Source: Octopus bimaculoides (lineage: Eukaryota). Taken from it: a DNA stretch of 64,000 bases. Below are positions 735 to 17,727 of the stretch, one piece after another. Below the pieces are notes generated by a model that worked only from the letters and a program-made list of their open reading frames with translations, was not told where the DNA came from and did no database searches. Where the stretch lies: positions 8,400,621 to 8,464,620 of the forward strand of contig NC_069001.1 of assembly GCF_001194135.2 (NCBI RefSeq), read 5' to 3'. Position 1 is the first letter of the stretch. The number at the start of each line of letters is the position of its first letter. The position numbers were made by a program, and so were the translations under genes.

Positions 735-3700
735 ATACATATATATATATAATGTAATGTCCATGTGTATGTTTATGTCTATATACATGTATGTTGTTTG
801 TGTATACATGTTTGTATGCATATGTATACATGTATATATATATCTGCACATGTGTGTATTGTTGGTACTACACATTGCTATGGTTTCACTTGTACCAGAT
901 TCTTGGCAATATCATTTGTTAATTATTTTTGTTTTTGGCATCTTTAAATTTCATTTATAGCAGTGTGGGTTGAAAGCATGGTATTGATTATTTATTTGCT
1001 CTGTTAGAATGTCTAAGAGACTTTTGTAGACAAGTATCAGTTGTCTAAAAATGACCGATTCTATTACTGTGTACTCAATTTGCTGAACTGTTTTGCCTTT
1101 TACAGGTCATGTTCGCTCATTAGAAGAATATTTAGGAATCCCTGCACCTCCAAATGAACGGACCGCTTTAAAATTCCAAAGTGACACAGTTATTGAGCTT
1201 CTACAGAAATCAGATGAATGGTGTCGGGTAAGTATATTTGTTCATACCTGTGTCTGAGTGAGTAGAAATAACAGTGACAGTACCAATGTGTGAGTAGCTA
1301 TAGCATTGCTGATGTTACTGTTACATTAGCTGGTGTGGTTGTATCATGGCAGATGTGACTGAAAATGCACTCCTGGTGTGACTTCAACATTGCAGGTGGG
1401 AATGTAACATTGATAGGTCCATAATCACAGATGTATAGGGATTTATTCATTTTGACAGTTACGTTTTGAAGACAACCCACCTCTCTAGATGGTGTATACC
1501 TGCATCTGTGTGTTTGTGTATGTGTTTGAATATATGTATATGTGTGATTGTGTGTGTGTGTGTTGTCATTAATGAAATATTTATTCCATTCCAGGGTCGG
1601 TTACGTGGAGATGAAGGATGGTTTCCAGCTCGGTCAGTTTCAGATGTTTCAAGTCGGGTACGTATGTCTGTCTGTCTGTCTATATGTCTCTACATAATAC
1701 TGCAGGACGGTGGTTGTGATGGTGTAAATAGTTGCTGTTCTGTACTGGGTAAGAGTTGGACAGTATAGTTCACATTACTATATTCCTATGACCACAAGCA
1801 TGGCTGGATTGTTAAAAAGCTTGCCTTGCAATCGTGAAGAATGGGATTCAATTCCACTGTGTGGTGTCTTGAATAAATGTCTTCTACCATAACCTTGGAT
1901 TGAGTCCAGTCTTGTGGGTAAAATTAAGTAGATAGAAACCTTGTGGATGAACTGTATCTGATATTAAAATAATCCATCCTTGTTATTCTTAGTGACATAT
2001 TGGTTCTCTCTGAAAATTAAGTTAAAGGTGTGTATGTATGTGTGTGTGGATAACTTAACTCCTTTCATTAAAATACAAAGTGGATTGTACTTGTCTTCAA
2101 GAGCCAGCCTTGTCACTTTCTCAGTTATGCCACCTCCCCCAAGGGCAGCTTGGGGGAGGTGGGAATGAGTCGATTACATCGATCCCAGTGTTCAACTGGT
2201 ACTTATTTTATCGACCCCAAAAGGATGAAAGGCAGAATTTAAACTCAGAATGCAAAGACAGACAAAATGCCGCTAAGCATTTTGCCTGGTGTTCTAACAA
2301 TTCTGCCTGCTCGCCACCTTTAAATAATAATAATAATAGTTTCAAATGTGGGCACAAATCCAGCCATTTTAAGGAAGGGAGACATTGACCCCAGTGCTTG
2401 CCTGGTACTTACTTTATTGGTTGTGGAAAAGTTGACCTCAGTAGAATAAGCTAGGAAAAAAATACCATTAAGCATTTTGTCTAATGCTCAAATGGTTCTG
2501 CCAGTTCACTACCTCTGTAGTAGTTGTAGTCATAGTAGTGGCAGTAGTAGTAGTGAGGATGATAATAATGGTAATTTAAGATACATTTAATATCTTCAGA
2601 CTAAATTTTTCGGTGGAATGTAAACATGTAACTTCATTCTTCTGCTCACAGGGACGTATAGTAATCATTATATTTAAATGGAATAGCAATTGCTATTTAA
2701 GCCATGTAGCCTGACTACATTAAATTTATCTTACATTTTCTAATACATGTTGTTTGTACATGAATATTTGATAATAATGATAATGTGTTAATATTTATGA
2801 TCAACTTCTGCAACTAAATGACTCAGTTTCTCTAAGTGCAACTACTGTCGTATGCTGATGTTTTTCACAAGGGAAAGCTTTGGTAATGTTTCTGTTTCCA
2901 GTCTAGAACAGCATGTTATGAGAAAGCATTTCCACAGAAAGCAACAGAGAAAGCTCATCCTACAAAATTTCTCAATGGAATTAATCCCTCATCACAAGTG
3001 AAGAACTTAGCATCCTATCCTTGGTATGTATAACACACATGCATATGTGTGTGTGTGTGTTTGCCTCTAAACCTCTTGTATAAACCTTGTCTATCAATTC
3101 CTTTTTCAGGACCATCATCGAAAGACTTCATACACTGAACATAAGCTGAATGGCCACCATCATGCTATTACTAATACTACAGAGCATGGCAACAATCTAC
3201 CTAAGTTTGACACCTCTATGTTAACAAAATACCCTTGGTATGTACTCTCACTCCTCACACAATCACTGCAGGCTCACTAGAATATTTCAGTATTCCCATG
3301 AGAACATTTCGAACATACAGGCTAAAACTAGAATATTCTAACATTCCCCACTAGAATAGTTAAATATTTCCCAGTGCAGTATTCCATAATTTGTTATTAG
3401 GATATTTCAGCATTTTCCATGAGAATTTCCAATATTGCCCACTGGAAGATTACATTTCAACATTCTCCAATAAAATATTCCAACATAACATCTAGAATAT
3501 CTCAGTATTACAACAGTCCTATATTCCCTATTAGAATATTCCAATATTCTCACAAGCAGTATTCAACACTGCCCTCATCTTTAGAAACTCTTTAGATTTT
3601 ATTTTTAAAATGTTCAATTCAATTCAATTTGATCATAATTACAAAAATACAATTAATCAACTGGTGAGACTGTAACATCTGACATCTTGACTGTCTTTCC

Positions 3701-5863
3701 AAGAATTTCCATAGATATCTAAGCTATTTCTATTAACTAATTCCTTTAATAATATTCAAAGTCTCATAAACTCACCCAGCACAGCACTTTGTCACAATTC
3801 TTCTCTTTCTTCTTTACTTAGTACTTATTTTCTTGATTTCATAGCGGGTGGAAGACAAAATCAATGTGAACTCGAAAGGATGTGATGAAGATGGAATAAA
3901 ATAACACAGGTTATTTTTGTTTGGCAGATCTGTTCTTCTACATCTCACACCCCTGCACACACACTCGTATAGTGGACTTATGGTAGAAGACACTGACCCA
4001 GTGCCGTAGTTTTATATTTAGAGCAAAAGTTTGCTTTTGACTCAACTCATTTACAAAATATCTGTGTGGTGGTTCATATTCATCCATCTATATTTCACAA
4101 ATGACATCATGTTTTCTGTTATCTAACTGCAACAAAATGGCTTGTAATTTTAAAATAAATTTCTCCAGTGACATATTCACACTTCCATCAATCACTGTAG
4201 AGTTATTTTGGGGAATTGTAAATGTCTGTACACTGTTATCATATTTACATTTTGTAAGTATATTTTTCTCAATAAAATGAGATATATTGAACACTTTCAC
4301 TATACATCTCTGTAGGACTAGATTTTTTTATACAGTAAGATAGAAAAGCGGAGGTTTTGATTTACTACATTGGACAAATCCAGTGCTATGTTGAGGCCCT
4401 CATTCCTCTTTTGATAAAGCTGATACCTCAGAATTACTCTTTTCAAAAGCGGAATATATTGGTTTGCTGAAAGGAAGACAAAAAACTTCATTAGAGATGT
4501 TTAGTAATGACACCTGATAAATCGGTAGGGAGAGAGAGAAGGGAAAATGGGTGGTGGGTGGGCAGAATAGTGAAGAACAAAGGTACAAAGGTGGGGCATA
4601 TTGTAGTACATTAATCTTATTCATGACCATGATTGTTGTTGCAATAAATTGTTTTGTAACTGGGATTATCACTACACAAATATTTTCTATAAACATGGCT
4701 CTCATCACAGTAATTGCTTCCATAACCTCTTCTATTACTATAACTATCACAAGTGTATCCTCTTCTATAACCATTGCTATCACTACATTAATCACTAAAA
4801 TAACTTATAACAGTTACTATCACTGCAACAACCTCTTCTGTAGCCCTGGTCTATCTTTACAATATCTTCTTTAACCATAACTATCCACTTCATTAACCTC
4901 TTTGGTAATGATGGTTTTCACTTCAGTAACATGTTCTGTAACCTGGGCTATTAACTATATTAACTTCTTTAACCATGATTATCACTAAATTAACATCTAT
5001 AATCATGGCTATTGCTATTTTAAATTCTTCTATAACAAAGCTATCACTACATCAGCCTTGTCTATAACTGTGCTTATCATTTTCTAACTTCTTCAGTAAC
5101 CATGACTATCATTGCAGTTAAATCTTCTATAACCATCACTATCGCTAAAGTAACCTTTTCAACATCAATTGCTATTAATATATTAACACTTCTCTGATAG
5201 TGACTATCCATATATCCATCCGTAACTGTGCGTATCAGTTCAACTTCCCTCACCTTCAGAAACCATAGCTACCAGTTCCTCAAACTTCACTTCAATCAAC
5301 TTTATTCAGACGTATAACCTTCCTACTAGTTGTTACCTTCCAGTGACCCTGCAACCCTTGTGTTCCTTTCTATTTCACTTCTGATTCTCACTTAACCTCC
5401 AACTTCATCTTCTTTTTCCTGTTACACCGTACTATTGTTGTTTTTGATGTTGTTGTTGTTGTTGTTATTAAGTACCATCAATTAGCAGAATCAGTGGAGC
5501 GATAGACAAAATGCTTTTGTGTTAGATCTCTTTACATTTATTTTGAGTTTAAATCCCATTGAGATCAGCTTGCCCATGATTGGAAATTTATCTACTGATT
5601 GGAAATGTATCATTCCAGTGATAATATAATTTCTAACATGGACACAGAGTTAGAAATTTGGAGGTGAGGTGGTCTTGTCAATTTTATCAACTATGCTACT
5701 TTTGTTTTAGCTACCCTAGAGGAATGAGATGCGAAGTTGACTCTGGTTGGATTTGAACCAAGAATCTAAAGAGCCATAACCAATATATCACAAGACATTT
5801 TGTCAATGATCTAACAATACTACCAATCCACTACTATAGTAATGGTGATAATAATAATTGCTG

Positions 5864-5900
<37 letters not shown>

Positions 5901-5910
5901 NNNNNNNNNN

Positions 5911-5947
<37 letters not shown>

Positions 5948-8250
5948 GTGTGTGTGTATCATTATTATTATTATTATTATTATTAAGGCAGTTAACTGGC
6001 AGAATCGTTAGCATGCTGGCCGAAATACTTAGCGGCATTTTGTCTGTTGCTATGTTCTGGGTTTAAATTCCACTGAGGTCGACTTTGCCTTTCATCTTTT
6101 CAGGGTCGATAAAGTAAGTACCAGTTGAACACTGGGGTTGATGAAACTGACTCATCCTCTCCTCCGAAATTGCTGCCCTTGTGGCAAAATTTGGAACCAT
6201 TATTATTATTGTTATTATTGAGTTGTAGTAGTAGTATGTGAATGGCATGGCAGAAACTGTAACGAAGTTTGTACTAATGGCTCATTTTACAGAATTTAGT
6301 GATGTTCCTTTTTCATTTGGAGATCCAAGCCACCAAAATCACCTTTTTATTCTTCTGGGTTCGATAAAAATACCAATCAAGTGTTAGTGTTTGGTGCTAA
6401 TTTAATTGACTAATCCAGCTGTAAATTTGTTAACTTGTGCCTATGTTATGAATTTATTATTATATGTAGTATAGTAGTAGTAGTATTTGTATAAGTAGTA
6501 AAATGGCATGGCAGATGTTTAGTACTAATGCATATTTGCAAATGATTCTGTTCAAATGAAGCTAAACTCCATGCTGCTGCTCCTGCTACTGTAGAACTGA
6601 ACTAATAATACTAGCAAAGGACTTCTCTTCAGTCCGTGCTAGTGTCTTCCCATCTTTGATGATCATTACCATCACCCTTGTTGACATAGCCATCATCATC
6701 ATTGTCATCGCCATCATTTGTCATCATCAAGTTTATTGTTTGTTGCTTACTATAAACAGCTGCTGGAAATCACAGTTGTGCGCAGCTGGTAGACTTTGTC
6801 TAGCATCCAAAATGGCTGATGTTCCGAGGAAGAAGATTTGGGGCAAAGTGGGTAATTTCAAGTAAAAGAGGTTGGATACAACGAGGTGGTAAAAGGTAGA
6901 GGTGAGTGAGTTGGGAGGATGTGCCAGTGTGGAAGAGGTATGAGATCAGCCAGTTTTGTGAAGTAGAAGCCACTATAGCAGTGATAGAAAAGATGGAGAA
7001 GAGACAGTCTGCCCGTAGATCAGAGGTTAGAGTGTGTCCATTGCTGATGGAATGCCAAACAGCTGCATAGCCCTTCTCTCGATGTAGTCTGGGATGTGTG
7101 TAGCAGCTGCACTATCCCACATTTGTAGCAGCTGCTCTATTCCATTATAGGCCTCACTTGAGCCCCGTAGAAGTTCAGCTGTTGTTTGGGGCTGAAATAC
7201 CTTCTGATCCTGAAGAGAAGTGCTAGTCTTTGAGATGTGATCTTGGCTATGTTAGGGATGTGTTTTTGCCAGGAGAGATCCTTGGTGATAGTGGGGACCA
7301 TCATCTGGAGTAACTGTCAGGGTTCCAACCGAGAGCCACTCTTATTTAGTGGGATAGGGGTGCAGTGGTGTTTGAGATGAGGTTGGCATAGCCTCACTGG
7401 AGGATGCTCTCATGGTCTCTGCTTATGGAATCAGTGCAGTCTGGCAATTGAAGTCTAGGCTGTGTATAGATGATACTTGGTTAGGGAAAGATAAGGAGGA
7501 ATGAAGGGTGATGTATTTTGTACATATATACTTACATACATGAATGTGCTTTTTGTATATATATGTATGTGTATACATATGTGTGTATATGTGTGTTATA
7601 TAGACACACACACACATCAGAAAAAGGGATGATAAAGGAATAAATGATTATCTTAATGAACTTCATTAGCTTACAGCCGTTTCTGTTATGAGATGTAGGG
7701 GACTCATAGCTGAGTACTTGAATAACATCCTATAGCTTCATCAGAGCCTCAAATATGAAGTGCAATCTATATTGGAAAAACGAATTACATTTATCCTCAA
7801 ATAAACTGCCTTTCATATATGAGGCTCTGATGAAACTATAAGATGTTATTCAGGAAGGGTTGTGGGGGTAGAGTCCTCAGGTACCTCTTTCCAGAAGCAA
7901 CTGTCATTAGACTTTCCAGTTGGATTCCCAAGTGTGACTGACTGAGACTATGGCTATTATCGAACCACCTCATTCTCGGGCTACCCCTTACGTCTCCCGC
8001 TGGTTTGGCTTGGCTTGAAGAATCCATTTTGCAATTCTTTCCTGCTACAGCTGCAGGCCGACCTATTCTTTATGTGTGAATTTGATGGATGGAAACTGCA
8101 AGAAGCCTGTTGAGTGTGTGCATGCATGAATATTGATATTCCATGCTTGTTGCCATGTGAGTGAAACGACAAAGATTTTGACAGTTTTTGTTGATATTAT
8201 GACTGGTTGTTTTGTGTTTCCAAAGACCTGAAATAGAAAATCATATACTC

Positions 8251-8288
<38 letters not shown>

Positions 8289-8711
8289 GACAGGTAAATG
8301 TTGGTAACAGGAAGAATGACTTGCTGTAAAAATTCTGCTTCAAATAAGTACCCCTCTAACCCATGCTGGCATGAAAAATATAGACTTTAAGCAAATGAAT
8401 GATTAGAGTCATGTTTTTCTAGCAGGTGACTACCTCTGAGACCATGCTTTGAAACTGAAGTAATTACATTATGAAAAACTAGTCTAGTCATAGAATCTTA
8501 ATTCATTTCATGGGGTGCAGGAATTTTCTTCATACAGCTGCAACCTGGTTCTTGAGTTGCCATGGAAGTCTGTCAGTGGCTATGTCTTTTACATGTGTGT
8601 GTATGCATTTATATATACACACACAGAGATTGCACATACTTACATACATACATAAATATATATATATATCTATATATGTGTGAGTGTATGTTTAAGTACA
8701 TATAAATACGA

Positions 8712-8752
<41 letters not shown>

Positions 8753-10825
8753 TTGTTTAATCCCTTGCCACTCTGATACCACAGACTTGTGAATAAAGGT
8801 GATTGGTTTGTGACCATGTTGTCTCTTATTGGAAGGGAATTTGGCTGCTATTTCTGTTTGTTCAAGCACCACATTGAGGCTTTCTAGTTGTCTCAGGGTC
8901 AATGTTTATGTTACTATGTTAACTGAAATTGTAACTGTTTACTCACTTTAGTCTCCCCTAACTCCTCCTTCATCCAGGTATGTAGGACCAATGGAACGTG
9001 ACTGTGCCACCAAGAAGCTAGAAGGTCATGCCAGTGGCACATACATGATTAGAGAGAGTCAGAACCCAACACGAGCAGGAGAGTTATCTCTTAGTATATG
9101 GTAAGTACTGAAGTTGTTGTTAAGCTGTGGTTTAGTCATATGTGTGTGTGTGTACGTGTGTGTATTTTGTGACTCTCACTTTATAAGTAAATACTGTCCC
9201 GAGTCCTAGGACTCGTAGGGATGGTTACTGAGTTTCCTTGATGTATAAGTGATCGAGAGCCCTGCATTACTCCTGAACAGGAAGGATGGTAGGCAGTTTC
9301 AGAATTACCAATTTACAGTGTGTGAACTGGAGCAACATGAAATGAAGTGTTTTGCTCAAGAATACAATGTATTACTCAGTTTGGGAACCAAAACTGTGAG
9401 CTTGCTATCATGCATGCAACGTCCTAATGTGTAGGCCGTGTTCTTTCACATCCTCACTATATGGTGTATGTGTCATTCTTGTTAGGCTATGGGCTGATGT
9501 TATGTATCATCATGTTACTCAGAACAGCGTGCATTGTTGTTGACTAATGGGGGATGTTTATGTAGTAACCTCCCTCAGAATGCTGTTTTGTTGTTGTTGG
9601 CTATCAATTGATGATGTGCTTATGTGATGGTGTCACTCTGTATACACAGTTTATTGTTGTTTTTTTGTTAGGCTATAGGTTGGTGATGGGTATGTGTGAT
9701 GTTGTCACTTACTGTATATTTCGATAGTATGTATTATTGCTGTTGTTGTTGCTGCACCATGACCTGATCATGTGTATAAGGCTATCATTCAATGCATAGT
9801 ATTGTATTGTCATTGCTGTTAAATTATAGGGGTTGTATCTGTATATTTGTGTATGTTTTACTTATGAAGCTATAAGTTGGAGGAAATGTTTGTGTGTGTG
9901 CGCGAGAAAGGAAGTGTGTGTGGATGTGTGTTACATATCTGTTACATGTTAATGTGTGTAAAAAAATGCATGAGTTAATTTGTAATTGGAGATTGAGCTT
10001 GTGCCTATGTGAGTGTATTGCCATGGCAATACACATCCATTTGGTGTGTTGACAAGAACAGCATGCCATGTGATAATGATGTCACAGTTACACAGCACTC
10101 GTGTATATTTTGTTCTGACAACATCATACACATGTTGTGTGTTAGGGCAACACAGCTATGCAATGTGCTGTTCTAACAACACCTAGTCATTTGATGTGCT
10201 GTCATCACTACAGCCACAACTGCTATGTCCTGGCAATACAGTCATGTATGTTATCAGGAGAACACAGATGTGTGGTCACTTCCTTTTAACAACAGTGCAT
10301 GCCTGTTCTGATGACAATACAATGTGTGTTTGTACGTGAGTGTTATCATGCTAACACTTTAATATTCATCTTTTTTTGTCCTTATAGTTTTGACAGTACA
10401 GTTCGTCATATAAAAGTGAATAAAACGTCAGATGGAGATTTTTTCTTGGCCGACATCAAATTTTTCCACTCACTCCCAGTAAGTATGGCCATTTGCTCCT
10501 CTCTTTATTTTTCTCAATTTTTTTCTTTTCANNNNNNNNNNNNNNNNNNNNNNNNNNNNNNNNNNNNNNNNNNNNNNNNNNNNNNNNNNNNNNNNNNNNN
10601 NNNNNNNNNNNNNNNNNNNNNNNNNNNNNNNNNNNNNNNNNNNNNNNNNNNNNNNNNNNNNNNNNNNNNNNNNNNNNNNNNNNNNNNNNNNNNNNNNNNN
10701 NNNNNNNNNNNNNNNNNNNNNNNNNNNNNNNNNNNNNNNNNNNNNNNNNNNNNNNNNNNNNNNNNNNNNNNNNNNNNNNNNNNNNNNNNNNNNNNNNNNN
10801 NNNNNNNNNNNNNNNNNNNNNNNNN

Positions 10826-13211: not shown

Positions 13212-16200
13212 TGATGTAAGTGACCATATATTATTACATGTATATAACTACCACTTTGATATGATATGCATGGTATCATTTTCATGATATTTTTCTCAAC
13301 ATGGTGTTGATGTTTACATGTATTTATATTTTTGTTTACTTAATGTCACCTATATAACTTCCACCGCTTAAAACCACTTTCTTTTCATTGTAGTCCATGC
13401 AGTACTGTCTATATACATAGTGTTCTCTGTATTGTGTTGTTTATGCCATACTCTCTACGTAATGTTCTCTGCACAACTTCCCTCTACCTAACTATCCCTG
13501 CACAATCTTCTCTATTTTTATGTCCCCTACATAATGTCTTCACACTTTTCTCCACATAAAGTTTCCTATATATCTTATATGCTATTTTCTCTAGTAGAAT
13601 ATTCTTTGTATAATGTCCTCAACACAATATCCTGTATATCATGTTCTCTACATATCACCCTTCATTAGTCTTCTATACAATACACTCTACATAATCTTCT
13701 CTATATAGTATCCTCTACATAATGCTCTATACCTGTTGTGTGCAATATTCCATAATTATTGCCCTTTACAGAATCTCCTCTACATAATATGGTCTGCGTA
13801 ATGTACTCTACTTGATGCTTCTGTATGGTGCCCCCTGCATGATATACATATATTGTGTGTGTATTTGTAGCTCTATGCTTATCTATATTTATCTACATGA
13901 TACTGACTAGATGGTGTTTACATAATGTAGTTGACATTGTGTCATGTTATATGGTCTCTGTATTATCTTCTGCATGATGTCCCCTCCATACTGTCCCTTG
14001 CATGATGTCCTCTCCATATTGTCCCTTGCATGATGTCTTCTGCATACTCTCTCCTACATGATGTCCTCTCCATATTGTCCCCTGCATGATGTCCTCTCCA
14101 TGCTGTCCCTTGCATGATGTCCTCTACATATTGCTCCTTGCATGATGTCCTCTGTATACTGTCCCCTGCTTGATGCCCTCTACATATTGTCCCCATGCAT
14201 GATGTCTTCTACATAGTGTTCCCGCTACCATGTAGTCTTCATATTCTGGTCTACACAGTGTTAAGTGTCATCTCTAATTGATTGTTTCCCTTATTTTGCC
14301 CCTCTTTCTCTCTTTCCAGCAGGGTTTTCATGGAATCTGAATATAGTGAGTTATGCTGTTGCCATTTATGATTATTCAGCAACGGCCACCAACCAGCTTT
14401 CATTGCGGGTGGGTGACCGGGTGGCAATATTGAGCAAAGCTGGAGGTGACAAGGGCTGGTGGAAAGGAAAGATTCTACATTATGGAAAGGTATGCTTCTG
14501 CTTCATTTAGCAACATAACCTTCAACTCATTAACTCTACTAAAACAACAAAACAACCCTTCTTTCTCTAGTTTTTATTTTTCTGGTGTTTTATATGATTA
14601 CCTAGGAGTTATCCAACAATTACCACAACATTCCTTCATTTGATTGAGCCTTTTAAATTATTCTTTACTCAAGAAGTATTTCATGACCAACATTGATTGA
14701 TTAAAAATCAATTTTAAGTGTTTTGCTTGATTACTCAGGTTATACAACAACATAACAACTACAATAATGTTGTTTTTTTTTTTTGATCCAGACTCATCTA
14801 TACGGTTTGGCTTCAAAGCCCATTGTGTTTATGTACGTGTGTGTGTGTTGGTGCCACATAAAAAGCACTCGTGCTGGTGCTACGTTCAAAGCACTCAATA
14901 CACTCTATAAAGTGAAGGGCATCCAGCAATGGAAACCATGCTAGAGCAGACGGTGGAGCCTGGTGCAACCCTCTGGCCTTACTAGCTTCGATAAAACTGT
15001 TCAACCCATGCCAGCATGGAAAATGGATGTTAATAATGATGATGATAATGTATGTCTATATGTATGTGTTTGTCTCCTGTTTGACAACCAAAGTTAGTTT
15101 GTTTACATTCTTGTAACATTAGTGGTTCAGCAAAGGAGAGCAATGGAATAAGTATCAGACCTCAAAGATAAGTATTGAGGTAGTTAGTAGAAAGAAGCAT
15201 CTGGTTATTAAGGACAGTTACTTCCTAGAACCTCCCTACTTACCAACCTTCTATGCAGTCAGGTTGAAATTACTACGGAAGTAAATTTACCTACCTCCCT
15301 ATCCATCCATCCACCTGATTATCTCCCTTCCCACCCACCCATCTCCGTACCTACCTACCTACCTACCTACCTACCTATCTGCCTACCCACACACCCATAT
15401 AAATGTTGCTTAGAGCAAGGCCAGTCTTGGTTCTACAGATTTCTGATATGTGGATAGCTAGTTGAATGACTTGTTGCAAATCATTGTTTCTCTGGTGAAT
15501 TTTAGATAATTCTTTGGGTATTCCACTTATAATTTTCTGCTCATAACCCTTTAGCATTTAAACTGGCCATATTCAGCCTAAATATGCCCTCTAAATATTA
15601 TGATCAAACTGGCTAGATTCAGCCTCTCACATCTGGTTGACTTTGTCATTTCTAAAAATAAACAATCACATTGTAGAAATCAAAGCTATGAGATAATGTA
15701 TGATGTCTTTAAAAGAACCAAAATAAATAAACATTACATTTGACAGAATAATCCGAATGCTAAAGGGTTAATAGACAAGGGTGTGGTTGAAGGAAACCCC
15801 TTTGTTTTTTCTGACAAATCATGTAATCATATAGGAACACTCTCATTGGCTTGTCCACACATACACATACATAGAGAGAGCATTGTGTGCGTGTGTGTTT
15901 GTGTGTATGGGGAATGTATACTCTCTTTACTCTTTTACTTGTTTCAGTCAGTTGACTGTGGCCATGCTGGAGCTCTGCCTTTTAGTCGAGCAAATCAACC
16001 CCAGGGCTTATTCTTTGTAAGCCTAGTACTTATTCTATCGGACTCTTTTTGCCGAACCACTAAGTTACGGGGACGTAAACACACCAGCATCGGTTGTCGA
16101 GCGATGTTGGGGGGACAAACACAGACACACAAACATATATACACACACACACATATATACGATGGGCTTCTTTCAGTTTCCGTCTACCAAATCCACTCAC

Positions 16201-17004
16201 AAGGCTTTGGTCGGCCCGAGGCTATAGTAGAAGACACTCGCCCAAGGTGCCACGCAGTGGGATTGAACCCGGAACCATGTGGTTCGTAAGCAAGCTACTT
16301 ACCACATAGCCACTCCTACGTCTATAATGTGTAGTATCTTTGGTTTTGGGTTTTTTTTAAAGTTCAGCCCAACCCTGATGTAGAAGAGCAGAGATGTTCC
16401 AGCCATGAACATCCCACCTATTGTCCACACACAATATATATCTAGGATACATTATTATCTAATATGTCCTTCATTTCTGTTTTCAAAGACTAGTGTGATT
16501 TAAGAAAGATCTGGTGCTGATTCTAGGTGATTAAGCAACCACCTCATGCCTCCCTCCTTGGCTTGTCCACTAATTAATAATATCAGATTTAGGCTCAAGG
16601 CCAAGAATTTCGACCTGGATTACTTGATTAACCTAGTGTTTCACTGGTACTTTATTCTATTAATCCCATAAAAATGAACGACAATGTTTTCCTTGGCAGA
16701 ATTTGAACCTAAAAAGTAGAGAACCTGAACAAATACTGCAAATTATTTAGTATAATACTCTACCTAATTATTTTGTATAATACTCTACCTAATTATTTTG
16801 TATAATACTCTATCAAACACTGCACTACATAAATAAGCATTTCCTGATGTTTGTTGTTCTTACAGTTTCTTTTTTGCACTTCGTCTCCTTTTGGAACCCA
16901 TTTTTGACTCCTTTACCGAATGTCACGTTTACCTTTCTTTTTCTCTGCCTCATCTGCAGGTCGGCTACTTTCCACTAACATACGTACGAGAAGAAGAAGA
17001 CTAA
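655..17004 (+). CDS. vav: Vav-family guanine nucleotide exchange factor, 3' part (nSH3-SH2-cSH3); spliced CDS, 5' end lies upstream of the window
   Basis: Exons 655-678, 1106-1227, 1595-1657, [2902-3023 or 3110-3237], 8978-9100, 10388-10478, 11554-11647, 14320-14489, 16960-17004, all AG/GT and phase-compatible (1,1,0,0,2,2,0,1,0). The translation has the Vav-type nSH3 (EYLGIPAPP...EWCRGRLRGDEGWFP), SH2 (YPWYVGPMER...GHASGTYMIRES...VRHIKV...ELVEWYQENSL...LKIPFK) and cSH3 (AVAIYDY...LSLRVGDRV...GGDKGWWKG...VGYFPLTYVREEED*). These match Vav2/Vav3 motifs as I recall them (HASGTYLIRE, GGDQGWWKG). Confidence 0.95.
1106..1227 (+). CDS. vav: vav exon, N-terminal SH3 first part (SHVRSLEEYLGIPAPPNERTALKFQSDTVIELLQKSDEWCR)
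   Basis: ttttacag| ... |gtaagt; 122 nt, phase 1-0; G-x-P-x-P-P RT-loop typical of Vav nSH3. Confidence 0.9.
1595..1657 (+). CDS. vav: vav exon, nSH3 second part (GRLRGDEGWFPARSVSDVSSR)
   Basis: ccattccag| ... |gtacgt; 63 nt, phase 0-0; GWFP SH3 motif. Confidence 0.92.
2902..3023 (+). CDS. vav: vav alternative linker exon A (SRTACYEKAFPQKATEKAHPTKFLNGINPSSQVKNLASYP-W)
   Basis: tctgtttccag| ... TATCCTTG|gtatgt; 122 nt open, phase 0-2, ends in YPW exactly as exon B does. Confidence 0.75.
3110..3237 (+). CDS. vav: vav alternative linker exon B (DHHRKTSYTEHKLNGHHHAITNTTEHGNNLPKFDTSMLTKYP-W)
   Basis: cctttttcag| ... TACCCTTG|gtatgt; 128 nt open, phase 0-2, supplies the SH2-initial Trp. Confidence 0.8.
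3275..3570. repeat. Degenerate ~22-bp tandem repeat (CTAGAATATTCCAACATTCCCA)
   Basis: Recurrent AGAATATT(T/C)CA.CATT motif. Confidence 0.65.
4620..5290. repeat. Degenerate ~33-bp minisatellite (AACCTCTTCTATAACCATGACTATCACTACATT)
   Basis: Recurrent TCTTCTATAACC and ACTATCACTA at about 33-bp spacing. Confidence 0.75.
5986..6215 (+). mobile_element. tRNA-related SINE family B
   Basis: CTGGCAGAATCGTTAGC...AAATTCCACTGAGGTCGACTTTGCCTTTCATC...GGTCGATAAA...CCTTGTG...(ATT)n; flanked by (ATT)n. Confidence 0.85.
6715..7410 (-). mobile_element. Decayed CR1-group LINE 3' fragment
   Basis: Minus-strand translation gives YNGIEQ / AQVRPIME-type post-RT motif and downstream SLLHLFYHCYSG, with frameshifts; higher GC than the flanks. 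Confidence 0.55.
7719..7852. repeat. 41-bp inverted repeat with 52-bp spacer
   Basis: TGAATAACATCCTATAGCTTCATCAGAGCCTCAAATATGAA vs reverse complement of 7812-7852, 3 mismatches. Confidence 0.9.
8978..9100 (+). CDS. vav: vav exon, SH2 first part (YVGPMERDCATKKLEGHASGTYMIRESQNPTRAGELSLSI-C)
   Basis: ccttcatccag| ... |gtaagt; 123 nt, phase 2-2; SH2 FLVRES-like YMIRES. Confidence 0.95.
10388..10478 (+). CDS. vav: vav exon, SH2 middle (FDSTVRHIKVNKTSDGDFFLADIKFFHSLP)
   Basis: tttgtccttatag| ... |gtaagt; 91 nt, phase 2-0; V-x-H-I-K-V motif. Confidence 0.95.
11554..11647 (+). CDS. vav: vav exon, SH2 end (ELVEWYQENSLVHSFPELKTQLKIPFKESTT)
   Basis: ttcatttag| ... |gttggt; 94 nt, phase 0-1. Confidence 0.95.
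13971..14223. repeat. 28-bp minisatellite, 9 copies (TGCATGATGTCCTCTCCATATTGTCCCT)
   Basis: Units start at 13971, 13999, 14027, 14055, 14083, 14111, 14139, 14167, 14196. Confidence 0.92.
14320..14489 (+). CDS. vav: vav exon, C-terminal SH3 (AGFSWNLNIVSYAVAIYDYSATATNQLSLRVGDRVAILSKAGGDKGWWKGKILHYGK); alternative start 14323
   Basis: tctctttccag|cag| tandem acceptor ... |gtatgc; phase 1-0; canonical SH3 motifs. Confidence 0.95.
14840..15048 (+). mobile_element. SINE family E (GGAAGGGCATCCAGC motif, (GAT)n tail)
   Basis: AAGGGCATCCAGC...CAACCCATGCCAGCATGGAAA...(GAT)n; copies at 20020-20250, 56450-56640, 63830-63972 (+) and 34404-34560, 50340-50560 (-). Confidence 0.75.
15544..15771. mobile_element. 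piggyBac-type MITE family 1
   Basis: TAACCCTTTAGCATTTAAA...GAATGCTAAAGGGTTAA; further copies at 21265-21465, 38970-39195, 50731-50930. Confidence 0.8.
15921..16317 (-). mobile_element. tRNA-derived SINE family A (internal (TA)n/(TG)n microsatellite)
   Basis: Head GGCTATGTGGTAAG...GGGTTCAATCCC, TTGGGC.AGTGTCTTCTACTATAGCC, body GACAACCGATGCTGGTG...CGTAACTTAG, tail GAAACAAGTAAAAGAG. Confidence 0.9.
16960..17004 (+). CDS. vav: vav terminal coding exon (VGYFPLTYVREEED*)
   Basis: ctcatctgcag|GTCGGCTACTTTCCA...GACTAA; completes the cSH3 GxFPxxYV; TAA at 17002-17004. Confidence 0.93.
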   Translation, partial: VGYFPLTYVREEED

Positions 17005-17727
17005 AACGAGGAAACCAGCATGCTCCGTCGCGAACTCCATCTGGTCTTTGTATTCCAAGGAACAACAAAAACACCATTACCGCAACAACATCAACAAAAA
17101 AAACTACTACAACAATATCGACAACAATCACTACCACCAGCACCACCACCACCACCACCGCNNNNNNNNNNNNNNNNNNNNNNNNNNNNNNNNNNNNNNN
17201 NNNNNNNNNNNNNNNNNNNNNNNNNNNNNNNNNNNNNNNNNNNNNNNNNNNNNNNNNNNNNNNNNNNNNNNNNNNNNNNNNNNNNNNNNNNNNNNNNNNN
17301 NNNNNNNNNNNNNNNNNNNNNNNNNNNNNNNNNNNNNNNNNNNNNNNNNNNNNNNNNNNNNNNNNNNNNNNNNNNNNNNNNNNNNNNNNNNNNNNNNNNN
17401 NNNNNNNNNNNNNNNNNNNNNNNNNNNNNNNNNNNNNNNNNNNNNNNNNNNNNNNNNNNNNNNNNNNNNNNNNNNNNNNNNNNNNNNNNNNNNNNNNNNN
17501 NNNNNNNNNNNNNNNNNNNNNNNNNNNNNNNNNNNNNNNNNNNNNNNNNNNNNNNNNNNNNNNNNNNNNNNNNNNNNNGAAAAAAAGAAGAACGCCCTAA
17601 CTTCACATTTTCCAGGGATCACCCACTTACTGGGTTCTGTCAGTTTTTAAAAAATGTGAGAACTATATATATGTATATGTGTGTGTGTGTGTGTATATAA
17701 ATACAAGTGTGTGTGTATGTGTGTGTG

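What the first reader, a model, noticed from the sequence alone, without database searches (positions are those of the whole stretch)
2902..3237. Tandem mutually exclusive exons swap the nSH3-SH2 linker of octopus Vav
Seen: two open exons, both phase 0 to 2 and both ending TAY-CCT-TG|gtatgt (Tyr-Pro-Trp), separated by an 86-nt intron. Including both gives W-TIIERLHTLNIS-stop, and skipping both shifts the frame, so exactly one can be used. Residual similarity (RTACYE / RKTSYTE, FLNG / KLNG, L..YPW) suggests an old exon duplication. Linker B carries 7 His and an R-K-x-S (PKA-type) site; linker A is Lys/Ala-rich with 1 His. Both linkers (about 40 aa) are longer than the vertebrate Vav linkers I recall. 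Inference: two Vav isoforms with different SH3-SH2 spacing or regulation. The short intron has an 8-bp hairpin (ACACACAT/ATGTGTGT, 3033-3052) and a candidate branch A about 46 nt from the donor, so exclusivity could be steric as in alpha-tropomyosin. I know of no description of such exons in Vav, but cannot search.
Basis: partly seen in the sequence, partly recalled or inferred. Interest (0 to 1): 0.8.

Follow-up and report, generated by a model that had tools for sequence, protein, structure and literature searches.

The report
Alternative linker exons in octopus Vav
The octopus Vav signalling gene has two adjacent exons, only one of which can be used per mRNA, that swap the flexible tether between its first SH3 domain and its SH2 domain; the same two-exon layout is present in cuttlefish, oyster, snail, brachiopod and amphioxus Vav genes, so it is real and probably old, but it is an ordinary kind of alternative splicing already captured in database gene models.

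Summary
Window 2902-3023 (exon A, 122 nt) and 3110-3237 (exon B, 128 nt) are open, both 3n+2, both end TAY-CCT-TG|gtatgt, and lie 86 nt apart between the last nSH3 exon (1595-1657) and the first SH2 exon (8978-9100) of Octopus bimaculoides Vav. Using both or neither gives an early stop.

GenBank/RefSeq models already hold A-only and B-only isoforms in three Octopus species and in a cuttlefish; none holds both or neither. Each exon is about 65% identical between octopus and cuttlefish.

B carries the R-K-x-S-Y motif found in most invertebrate Vav linkers; A lacks it. AlphaFold2 predicts both as disordered tethers ending in a short helix at the SH2 start.

Oyster, Biomphalaria, Lingula and amphioxus Vav loci also have two tandem 3n+2 linker exons ending in the same split Trp codon.

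Exclusivity is guaranteed by reading frame, with nonsense-mediated decay (NMD) inferred. A steric block is possible but not forced in octopus: branch candidates lie at +47 and +61. In amphioxus the 52-nt intron has no A beyond +17, so the block looks forced there.

A-B sequence similarity is not significant on its own. I found no paper describing this. Verdict: new member of a known kind, moderate interest.

The parts
1108..1227 (+). Vav exon encoding the first part of the N-terminal SH3 domain (HVRSLEEYLG...DEWCR)
   Evidence: Exact peptide match with ag| and |gtaagt boundaries; tblastn of O. sinensis and O. vulgaris Vav
1595..1657 (+). Last nSH3 exon, 63 nt, phase 0 to 0 (GRLRGDEGWFPARSVSDVSSR), common to all isoforms
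2902..3023 (+). Alternative linker exon A, 122 nt (3n+2): SRTACYEKAFPQKATEKAHPTKFLNGINPSSQVKNLASYP + TG of Trp. Present in a minority of annotated isoforms.
   Evidence: Identical to the linker of XP_052831470.1. 27/41 identical to the cuttlefish A linker.
3024..3109 (+). 86-nt intron between A and B, GT-AG with a U2-type GTATGT donor. It is the shortest intron of the gene.
   Evidence: Other introns run from about 105 nt to 18 kb.
3028..3064 (+). Predicted 16-bp hairpin made of (CA)n/(TG)n. It starts at donor positions +5 to +7 of exon A's 5' splice site.
   Evidence: -17 kcal/mol, z = -2.9. A (TG)5+ run occurs in about 3.8% of 86-nt windows here. No cross-species data.
3066..3072 (+). Branch-site candidate CTCTAAA, with the A at intron position +47 (39 nt from the acceptor of B)
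3079..3085 (+). Branch-site candidate TATAAAC, with the A at intron position +61 (25 nt from the acceptor of B)
   Evidence: 5/7 match to TACTAAC
3110..3237 (+). Alternative linker exon B, 128 nt (3n+2): DHHRKTSYTEHKLNGHHHAITNTTEHGNNLPKFDTSMLTKYP + TG of Trp. Present in most annotated isoforms and carries the conserved R-K-x-S-Y motif.
8978..9100 (+). First SH2 exon, 123 nt. Its first base completes the Trp codon that is position 1 of the Pfam SH2 profile (WYVGPMER...SLSI).

Best explanation
Exons A and B are genuine, mutually exclusive coding exons of the single Vav gene of Octopus bimaculoides.

What each exon encodes:
- Each encodes a tether of about 41-43 residues between the N-terminal SH3 and the SH2 domain.
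- The first ~32 residues are predicted disordered.
- The last ~10 residues (L-x-x-Y-P-W) form a short helix that leads into the SH2 domain.

How A and B differ:
- B appears in most annotated isoforms. It keeps the basophilic-kinase-type Ser followed by Tyr (R-K-T-S-Y) that most invertebrate Vav linkers share, plus a His-rich stretch.
- A replaces that motif with R-T-A-C-Y-E and is Lys/Ala-rich.
- The switch therefore most likely exchanges a phospho-regulatable tether for one that lacks the site. This functional step is inferred.

How exclusivity is secured:
- Both exons are 3n+2, so only single inclusion keeps the SH2 and C-terminal SH3 in frame.
- A+B stops 13 codons into B. Skipping both stops 8 codons into the SH2 exon.
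- Both products have several downstream exon junctions, so they should be removed by nonsense-mediated decay. The frameshifts are shown; the decay is inferred.
- The 86-nt intron, with a hairpin next to A's donor, may further disfavour A-to-B splicing, but the sequence does not require this.

The same two-exon, 3n+2, split-Trp layout is present in other phyla, so the arrangement is old or recurrently evolved.
For: - Exon anatomy and frame consequences.
- A-only and B-only protein models in O. bimaculoides, O. sinensis, O. vulgaris and Acanthosepion (Sepia) pharaonis, with none holding both or neither.
- B-type linker on two Logan-assembled contigs (L003, L004).
- Conservation from octopus to cuttlefish: A 27/41 and B 28/43 identical, against 68% for the adjacent nSH3 stretch and 91% for SH2.
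- [RK]xx[ST]Y is present in 50 of 85 distinct Vav linkers, and R-x-x-S-Y appears in the 56-sequence consensus.
- AlphaFold2: pLDDT below 50 for residues 680-712 in both isoforms, then a helix at 711-717 (A isoform) or 716-721 (B isoform) before the invariant Trp.
- The Pfam SH2 profile starts at that Trp.
- Same layout in Magallana gigas (32 and 167 nt), Biomphalaria glabrata (155 and 134 nt), Lingula anatina (164 and 173 nt) and Branchiostoma floridae (128 and 155 nt). All are 3n+2, all end TG|gt, and all give stops on double inclusion or double skipping.
- In C. elegans, mutually exclusive clusters with non-3n exons rely on NMD in 14 of 19 cases: PMC4165533.
Against: - I could not examine any RNA-seq junction reads. 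The isoform evidence is annotated models, whose read support is not visible here.
- A search for short transcript-derived protein fragments found nothing.
- Model counts do not measure expression, so calling B the default is provisional.
- NMD in cephalopods was not tested.
- Exon A took 3 of the 7 amino-acid differences between the O. bimaculoides and O. sinensis proteins, so it is less constrained than B in the short term.
- The phospho-switch idea rests on motif conservation only.
Confidence: 0.8

Rival explanations
1. Steric hindrance is the main cause of exclusivity, as in alpha-tropomyosin exons 2/3. On this view the branch point used for exon B lies too close to exon A's donor for a spliceosome to assemble on the 86-nt intron, so A can never be joined to B.
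For: - The intron is the shortest in the gene.
- The CTCTAAA candidate puts the branch A 47 nt from the donor, just under the ~50-nt threshold quoted for vertebrates (PMC7969005).
- The hairpin at 3028-3064 would bring donor and branch still closer.
- In amphioxus the equivalent intron is 52 nt with no adenine beyond +17, so a steric block looks forced there.
Against: - A second candidate, TATAAAC, places a branch A at +61, 25 nt from the acceptor. That spacing is ordinary and lies above the threshold.
- The same gene splices a constitutive intron of about 105 nt.
- In oyster, Biomphalaria and Lingula the intervening intron is 1.0-1.3 kb, so a steric block is not what maintains the system in general.
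- In C. elegans, steric clusters are those with introns below the species minimum and 3n exons, unlike here.
- The minimum intron size for octopus is unknown to me.
Confidence: 0.3
2. Exon choice is set by RNA structure or by UG-repeat-binding proteins acting on the 86-nt intron. The hairpin would mask A's donor, or CELF/TDP-43-type proteins on (UG)7 would switch A and B between tissues.
For: - Stable hairpin overlapping donor positions +5 to +7.
- A (TG)5+ run occurs in only about 3.8% of 86-nt windows.
- CELF proteins regulate mutually exclusive exons in C. elegans (PMC3585155, abstract listed).
Against: - The element is a simple (CA)n/(TG)n microsatellite. There are 34 TG runs and 27 CA runs in this window, several of them next to other exons.
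- No orthologous intron could be fetched, so conservation is untested.
- No docking/selector-type complementarity was found, only dispersed and AT-rich repeats.
- There is no Rfam match in the window.
Confidence: 0.15
3. Exon A is not a functional coding exon. It would be a chance open frame that annotation pipelines picked up, or a decoy whose use is noise.
For: - A is in a minority of models.
- It shows 3 of the 7 O. bimaculoides / O. sinensis amino-acid differences.
- No read-level evidence was available.
Against: - The frame, length (41 aa in both species), both splice phases and 66% of residues are kept between octopus and cuttlefish, as well as the neighbouring nSH3 domain is kept.
- It was annotated independently in four species.
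- Other phyla keep a second linker exon at the same place.
Confidence: 0.03

Closest known systems
Mutually exclusive exon pairs whose fidelity rests on reading frame plus NMD (the non-3n clusters of C. elegans in PMC4165533; FGFR2 IIIb/IIIc from general knowledge)
   Same: Two adjacent alternative exons of similar length and the same phase, neither a multiple of three. Double inclusion and double skipping both create premature stops.
   Different: NMD dependence was not measured here. The exons encode a disordered inter-domain tether rather than part of a folded domain or channel segment. The sequence similarity between the two exons is not significant.
Sterically enforced pairs: alpha-tropomyosin exons 2/3 and OGDH exons 4a/4b with distant branch points (PMC7969005)
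   Same: Very short intervening intron. One branch candidate lies under ~50 nt from the upstream donor. The amphioxus Vav pair, with a 52-nt intron and no A after +17, fits this class well.
   Different: In octopus a second, normally placed branch candidate exists at +61, with no long pyrimidine tract separating branch and acceptor. The oyster, snail and Lingula Vav pairs are 1.0-1.3 kb apart.
Ancient substitutions derived from tandem exon duplication, catalogued for human genes (PMC8373072: 21 events traced to Bilateria)
   Same: Tandem alternative exons at the same position are kept in distant phyla (mollusc, brachiopod, cephalochordate). One member, the R-K-x-S-Y type, is recognisably orthologous across oyster, Lingula, Owenia and Lottia (z = 5-6).
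   Different: VAV does not occur in the main text of that paper (its supplements were not searched). None of the few vertebrate Vav2/3 models in my hit list showed a second linker. Orthology of the second member (octopus A) outside cephalopods is not demonstrable (z up to about 3).
Vav family isoforms as described in reviews (Bustelo 2014, PMC4601183)
   Same: The review states that alternative splicing yields isoforms in all species and that their signalling specificity is unknown.
   Different: No mutually exclusive linker exons are described there. The review also dates the N-terminal SH3 to tunicates, whereas these invertebrate Vavs have it.

Membership tests
Vav guanine-nucleotide exchange factor | Domain order CH - acidic - DH - PH - C1 - SH3 - SH2 - SH3 | tested here: met
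   Precomputed Pfam domains of the full-length octopus models. hmmscan of the 718-aa O. bimaculoides model, which starts in the acidic region and lacks CH, finds RhoGEF 59-232, PH 262-374, C1 389-431, SH2 545-622 and SH3 in two stretches. Exons map to the window and its upstream 100 kb.
Mutually exclusive exon pair | Two adjacent internal exons with canonical splice sites, the same entry and exit phase and similar length | tested here: met
   122 and 128 nt, both phase 0 to 2, both with ag| acceptors and TG|gtatgt donors
Mutually exclusive exon pair | Mature mRNAs contain exactly one of the two | tested here: inconclusive
   All 40-odd annotated cephalopod isoform models have A or B, never both or neither. 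Two Logan contigs carry B. No junction-read counts could be obtained (one search found nothing).
Mutually exclusive exon pair derived from tandem exon duplication | Significant sequence homology between the two exons | tested here: inconclusive
   The global alignment score is exceeded by 118 of 5000 shuffles with the shared YPW and by 4432 of 5000 without it. The shared skeleton [SC]-Y-x-E ... L-N-G ... L-x-x-Y-P-W and the comparative layout suggest common descent but do not prove it.
Frame/NMD-enforced exclusivity | Exon lengths not multiples of three, with premature stops upstream of further exon junctions in both the double-inclusion and double-skip products | tested here: met
   A+B stops at codon 54 of the joined exons. 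The skip product stops after 7 residues of the SH2 exon. At least four exon junctions follow.
Frame/NMD-enforced exclusivity | Aberrant products accumulate when NMD is blocked | not testable with these tools
   Needs an experiment
Steric-hindrance exclusivity (alpha-tropomyosin type) | The branch point of the downstream exon lies closer than about 50 nt to the upstream exon's donor | tested here: inconclusive
   Candidates lie at +47 and at +61. The threshold is taken from PMC7969005. The feature is met in the amphioxus locus, where there is no A beyond +17 of 52 nt.
U2/U12 spliceosome incompatibility | One flanking intron is of U12 type (/ATATCC or /GTATCC donor) | tested here: not met
   The donors are GTACGT, GTATGT and GTATGT, and all acceptors are Y-rich ...cag|
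Docking-site/selector RNA pairing (Dscam type) | Conserved complementary intronic elements, one per alternative exon | tested here: inconclusive
   The inverted-repeat scan of 1600-9100 found only copies of a dispersed ~200-nt repeat and AT/TG microsatellites. Conservation could not be tested because no other cephalopod intron was obtainable.

The most novel reading that the evidence does not exclude
The two-exon linker switch of Vav may be a single ancient invention, dating at least to the lophotrochozoan ancestor and possibly to the bilaterian ancestor more than 550 My ago.

- It would have been kept in cephalopods, bivalves, gastropods, brachiopods, annelids and amphioxus.
- It would have been lost in ecdysozoans and in vertebrates, where three paralogues may have taken over the roles.
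- It would toggle the presence of a conserved basophilic Ser-Tyr phosphorylation motif in the tether between nSH3 and SH2.
- That would make it one of the oldest known splice switches in a signalling protein, and one absent from the human-centred catalogues.
Probability: 0.35. Interest if true: 0.6.

Novelty: new member of a known kind. Interest (0 to 1): 0.4.

Why it matters
Vav proteins couple tyrosine-kinase signalling to Rho GTPases. Their C-terminal SH3-SH2-SH3 cassette both recruits partners and takes part in autoinhibition.

A review of the family states that nothing is known about what Vav splice isoforms do (PMC4601183). This finding offers a clean, binary, frame-locked switch in the nSH3-SH2 tether:

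- it is conserved across coleoid cephalopods;
- it is mirrored in at least three other phyla;
- one arm keeps a widely conserved R-K-x-S-Y motif and the other lacks it.

That gives a concrete hypothesis to test: phospho-regulated against constitutive tether.

It also offers a natural series for studying how exclusivity is enforced, because the intervening introns are 52, 86 and about 1000-1300 nt in different species.

It does not change how mutually exclusive splicing is understood.

Tried and rejected
1. Transcript fragments spanning the junctions. A 160-aa query restricted to the linker region found no candidate of 88-280 aa, so I have no read-level support.

2. Exhaustive search of 1.84 billion representatives with nSH3 end + A + SH2 start. 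It gave only 18 weak hits, driven by the SH2 part, and no further A-type linkers.

3. Genomic DNA of other cephalopods, to test conservation of the intron, hairpin and branch sites. Gene ranges were too long in Argonauta (175 kb) and Sepia (165 kb). Owenia was also too long, and several isoforms were not indexed.

4. A third linker exon in the flanking introns. None was found by tblastn with 14 linker peptides or by the donor motif.

5. Docking/selector complementarity. Only dispersed repeats and microsatellites turned up.

6. Known RNA families in the window. There were none.

7. Assigning octopus A to an orthologous type in other phyla.
   - A first impression (the 'Y-E' exon comes first and the 'R-K-x-S-Y-[LIV]' exon second in oyster and Lingula, as in octopus) is not backed by alignment statistics for A.
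   - Its z-scores are at most about 3, with the best partners inconsistent.
   - Amphioxus and Biomphalaria do not fit the order. I therefore dropped the claim.

8. U2/U12 incompatibility. Rejected from the donor sequences.

9. Literature. Six searches found no description of mutually exclusive exons in any Vav gene (text checks).
Full report
**What is in the sequence**

The window is G000:C21:8400621-8464620 of a 2.34-Gb assembly. One of those proteins has a linker identical to the translation of exon A. The gene is therefore O. bimaculoides Vav.

- The upstream exon is 1595-1657 (GRLRGDEGWFPARSVSDVSSR, the end of the N-terminal SH3).
- Exon A is 2902-3023 (122 nt).
- An 86-nt GT-AG intron follows.
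- Exon B is 3110-3237 (128 nt).
- The first SH2 exon is 8978-9100 (WYVGPMER...).
- Both alternative exons are 3n+2, and both end TAY CCT TG|gtatgt.
- U+A+D and U+B+D are open.
- A+B reads YPW-TIIERLHTLNIS-stop.
- Skipping both reads SSR-VCRTNGT-stop.

The Trp that each exon shares with the SH2 exon is position 1 of the Pfam SH2 profile.

**Is exon use really alternative?**

A length-padded search restricted to the linker, cluster listings and inspection of the linkers show that public gene models already contain both forms.

- Linker A is in XP_052831470.1 (O. bimaculoides isoform X2), XP_036367910.1 (O. sinensis X3), CAI9738615.1 (O. vulgaris) and CAE1281630.1 (the cuttlefish Acanthosepion pharaonis).
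- Linker B is in all other listed isoforms of these species and in Argonauta hians. There it carries a long Thr-rich insertion.
- Linker B is also on two Logan-assembled contigs of about 2.9 kb with a continuous 866-aa reading frame (L003, L004).
- No model has both or neither.

I could not reach junction reads. A search for short transcript-derived fragments found nothing.

Independent of annotation, exon A keeps its length, both phases and 27 of 41 residues between octopus and cuttlefish. Exon B keeps 28 of 43, with an indel. That matches the 68% identity of the adjacent 60 residues of nSH3; the SH2 domain is 91% identical. An unconstrained intronic stretch would not do this, so both are functional coding exons.

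In the short term A is looser. Three of the seven amino-acid differences between the O. bimaculoides and O. sinensis proteins fall in A, and none in B.

**What the two linkers are**

In an alignment of about 130 Vav proteins, and in a 56-sequence alignment, the nSH3-SH2 linker of invertebrates has three recurring features:

- a basic-x-x-Ser-Tyr motif near its start, present as [RK]xx[ST]Y in 50 of 85 distinct linkers;
- often a Y-[VIM]-N motif near its end, in 43 of 85;
- a terminal ...Y-x-W.

Octopus B (HRKTSYTEHKLNG...) keeps the first motif. Octopus A (SRTACYEKAF...) has Cys in place of Ser and no basic residue at positions -3 or -2. Cuttlefish A has K-Y-V-N-G where octopus A has K-F-L-N-G.

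AlphaFold2 was run with the 56-sequence alignment on the O. sinensis proteins, whose B linker is identical to the window's and whose A linker differs at three residues. For both isoforms it gives pLDDT of about 30 for residues 680-712 with no secondary structure. A short helix follows, at 711-717 in the A isoform and 716-721 in the B isoform, with better confidence just before the invariant Trp.

So each exon encodes a disordered tether plus a short structured lead-in to SH2. This explains why both keep L-x-x-Y-P-W. The likely functional difference is presence or absence of the Ser-Tyr phospho-motif and of the His-rich stretch. That step is inferred, not shown.

**Are A and B duplicates?**

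The A-B score is reached by 118 of 5000 shuffles with YPW and by 4432 of 5000 without it. The case for common descent rests on position, phase, length, identical 12-nt donor regions and comparison with other species.

**The same layout elsewhere**

I fetched Vav loci of Magallana gigas, Lingula anatina, Branchiostoma floridae and Biomphalaria glabrata and placed the alternative linkers of their annotated isoforms on the DNA. In every case two tandem exons lie between the last nSH3 exon and the first SH2 exon. Both are 3n+2, both end ...TG|gt in the SH2 Trp codon, and double inclusion or double skipping gives stops.

| Species | First linker exon (nt) | Second linker exon (nt) | Intron between them (nt) |
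|---|---|---|---|
| Octopus bimaculoides | 122 | 128 | 86 |
| Branchiostoma floridae | 128 | 155 | 52 |
| Magallana gigas | 32 | 167 | 1011 |
| Biomphalaria glabrata | 155 | 134 | 1255 |
| Lingula anatina | 164 | 173 | 1305 |

Owenia (an annelid), Ostrea and two further Branchiostoma annotations also show two linkers among isoforms of one gene.

A shuffle-normalised similarity matrix gives three results:

- The R-K-x-S-Y-[LIV]-D type exon of oyster, Lingula, Owenia and Lottia is clearly one orthologous group (z = 5-6).
- Octopus B joins that group only weakly (z = 2.8-4.2).
- Octopus and cuttlefish A has no significant partner outside cephalopods.

So the arrangement is at least as old as coleoid cephalopods. 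It is either much older or has evolved repeatedly. The data do not decide between those.

**How exclusivity is enforced**

What is shown is the frame rule. Only single inclusion keeps SH2 and the C-terminal SH3 in frame, in all five loci. Removal of the aberrant products by NMD is inferred. In C. elegans, 14 of 19 clusters with non-3n exons depend on NMD (PMC4165533).

The steric idea is possible for octopus but not forced:

- The best YTRA match puts a branch A at +47. That is just under the ~50-nt threshold quoted for simultaneous U1/U2 assembly (PMC7969005).
- TATAAAC puts another at +61, 25 nt from the acceptor.
- The same gene has a constitutive intron of about 105 nt.
- In amphioxus the 52-nt intron has no adenine beyond +17, so there a steric block looks unavoidable.
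- In oyster, snail and Lingula a steric block is impossible.

The hairpin at 3028-3064 is real in silico (-17 kcal/mol, z = -2.9) and touches donor positions +5 to +7. It is built from a (CA)n/(TG)n microsatellite of a kind common in this window, and its conservation could not be tested.

U12-type donors are absent. No docking/selector pairing was found. There is no third linker exon and no Rfam family in the window.

**Known or new**

Six full-text searches found no description of mutually exclusive exons in any Vav gene. VAV does not occur in the main text of the catalogue of ancient tandem-duplicated exon substitutions, PMC8373072 (its supplements were not searched). The Vav family review says only that splicing yields isoforms in all species and that nothing is known of their specificity (PMC4601183).

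The isoforms themselves are already in RefSeq and GenBank. This is a new, well-supported member of a well-known kind of splicing. The added observation is that the layout recurs in several phyla.

**Verdict**

- Observation: confirmed.
- Interpretation: partly supported. The alternative, mutually exclusive use is supported, the steric mechanism is unproven, and sequence similarity does not demonstrate duplication.
- Interest: 0.4.

Noticed in passing
Upstream of the window on the same contig: window coordinates -45055..-44936 and -38860..-38696 (G000:C21, about 8,355,566-8,361,925): A second mutually-exclusive-looking pair lies in the acidic region. The exons encode ...DDNQQIYEDLCSLKRKSTSQ and ...EEDEQIYEHLCIRHQRFST, and every full-length octopus and cuttlefish model has exactly one of them. 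From general knowledge, this segment corresponds to the inhibitory Tyr174 helix of mammalian Vav1. Two further optional acidic exons (-66786..-66664 and -55783..-55703) and an optional LLSAYLQ extension (-32244) combine with it.
   Followed up: partly
window 2155-2369 and 5985-6213: Two copies of a dispersed ~200-nt repeat sit in inverted orientation and bracket exons A and B. They are 74-85% complementary. Genome-wide the repeat has at least 45 scored copies and 6177 first-look candidates. Pairing between them could loop out both exons; no evidence that it does.
   Followed up: partly
window 8978-8984, with 3024-3030 and 3238-3244: The SH2 exon begins GTATGTA, the same seven bases that begin the introns after A and after B. 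The spliced junction therefore regenerates TTG|GTATGT, a donor-like site directly behind an acceptor. Lingula and Biomphalaria SH2 exons also start GTATGTG. This may simply reflect the Trp-Tyr-Val codons.
   Followed up: no
window about 14268-14492 and 16923-17072: Many O. sinensis and O. vulgaris models skip the large C-terminal SH3 exon and read the last exon in another frame. This gives a basic, then Thr-rich tail (GRLLSANIRSRRRR...TTTT...ATLV) in place of the C-terminal SH3. AlphaFold2 gives this tail low confidence. It could be a real isoform without the C-terminal SH3, or an NMD-type product that was annotated as coding.
   Followed up: partly
Proteins P0004 (Argonauta hians) and P0020/P0137 (cuttlefish), at the position equivalent to window about 3160: Linker B has a Thr-rich insertion after LNGHH: about 45 residues in Argonauta and a T7 run in cuttlefish. 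The middle of the tether is therefore free to expand.
   Followed up: no
Vav proteins of octopus, oyster, Lingula, Owenia, ticks and spiders: All have an N-terminal SH3 before the SH2 (two SH3 stretches in Pfam, with a ...GWFP... motif). A 2014 review dates this domain to tunicates (PMC4601183). The domain is evidently older and was lost in flies and nematodes.
   Followed up: partly
L007 26706-26720 (Branchiostoma floridae): A 15-nt optional micro-exon (DIQDL) lies just upstream of the two alternative linker exons of amphioxus Vav and combines with either of them.
   Followed up: no
window, whole: There are 3265 N bases, for example an assembly gap around 5901-5910 inside an AT microsatellite in the intron after exon B.
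   Followed up: no
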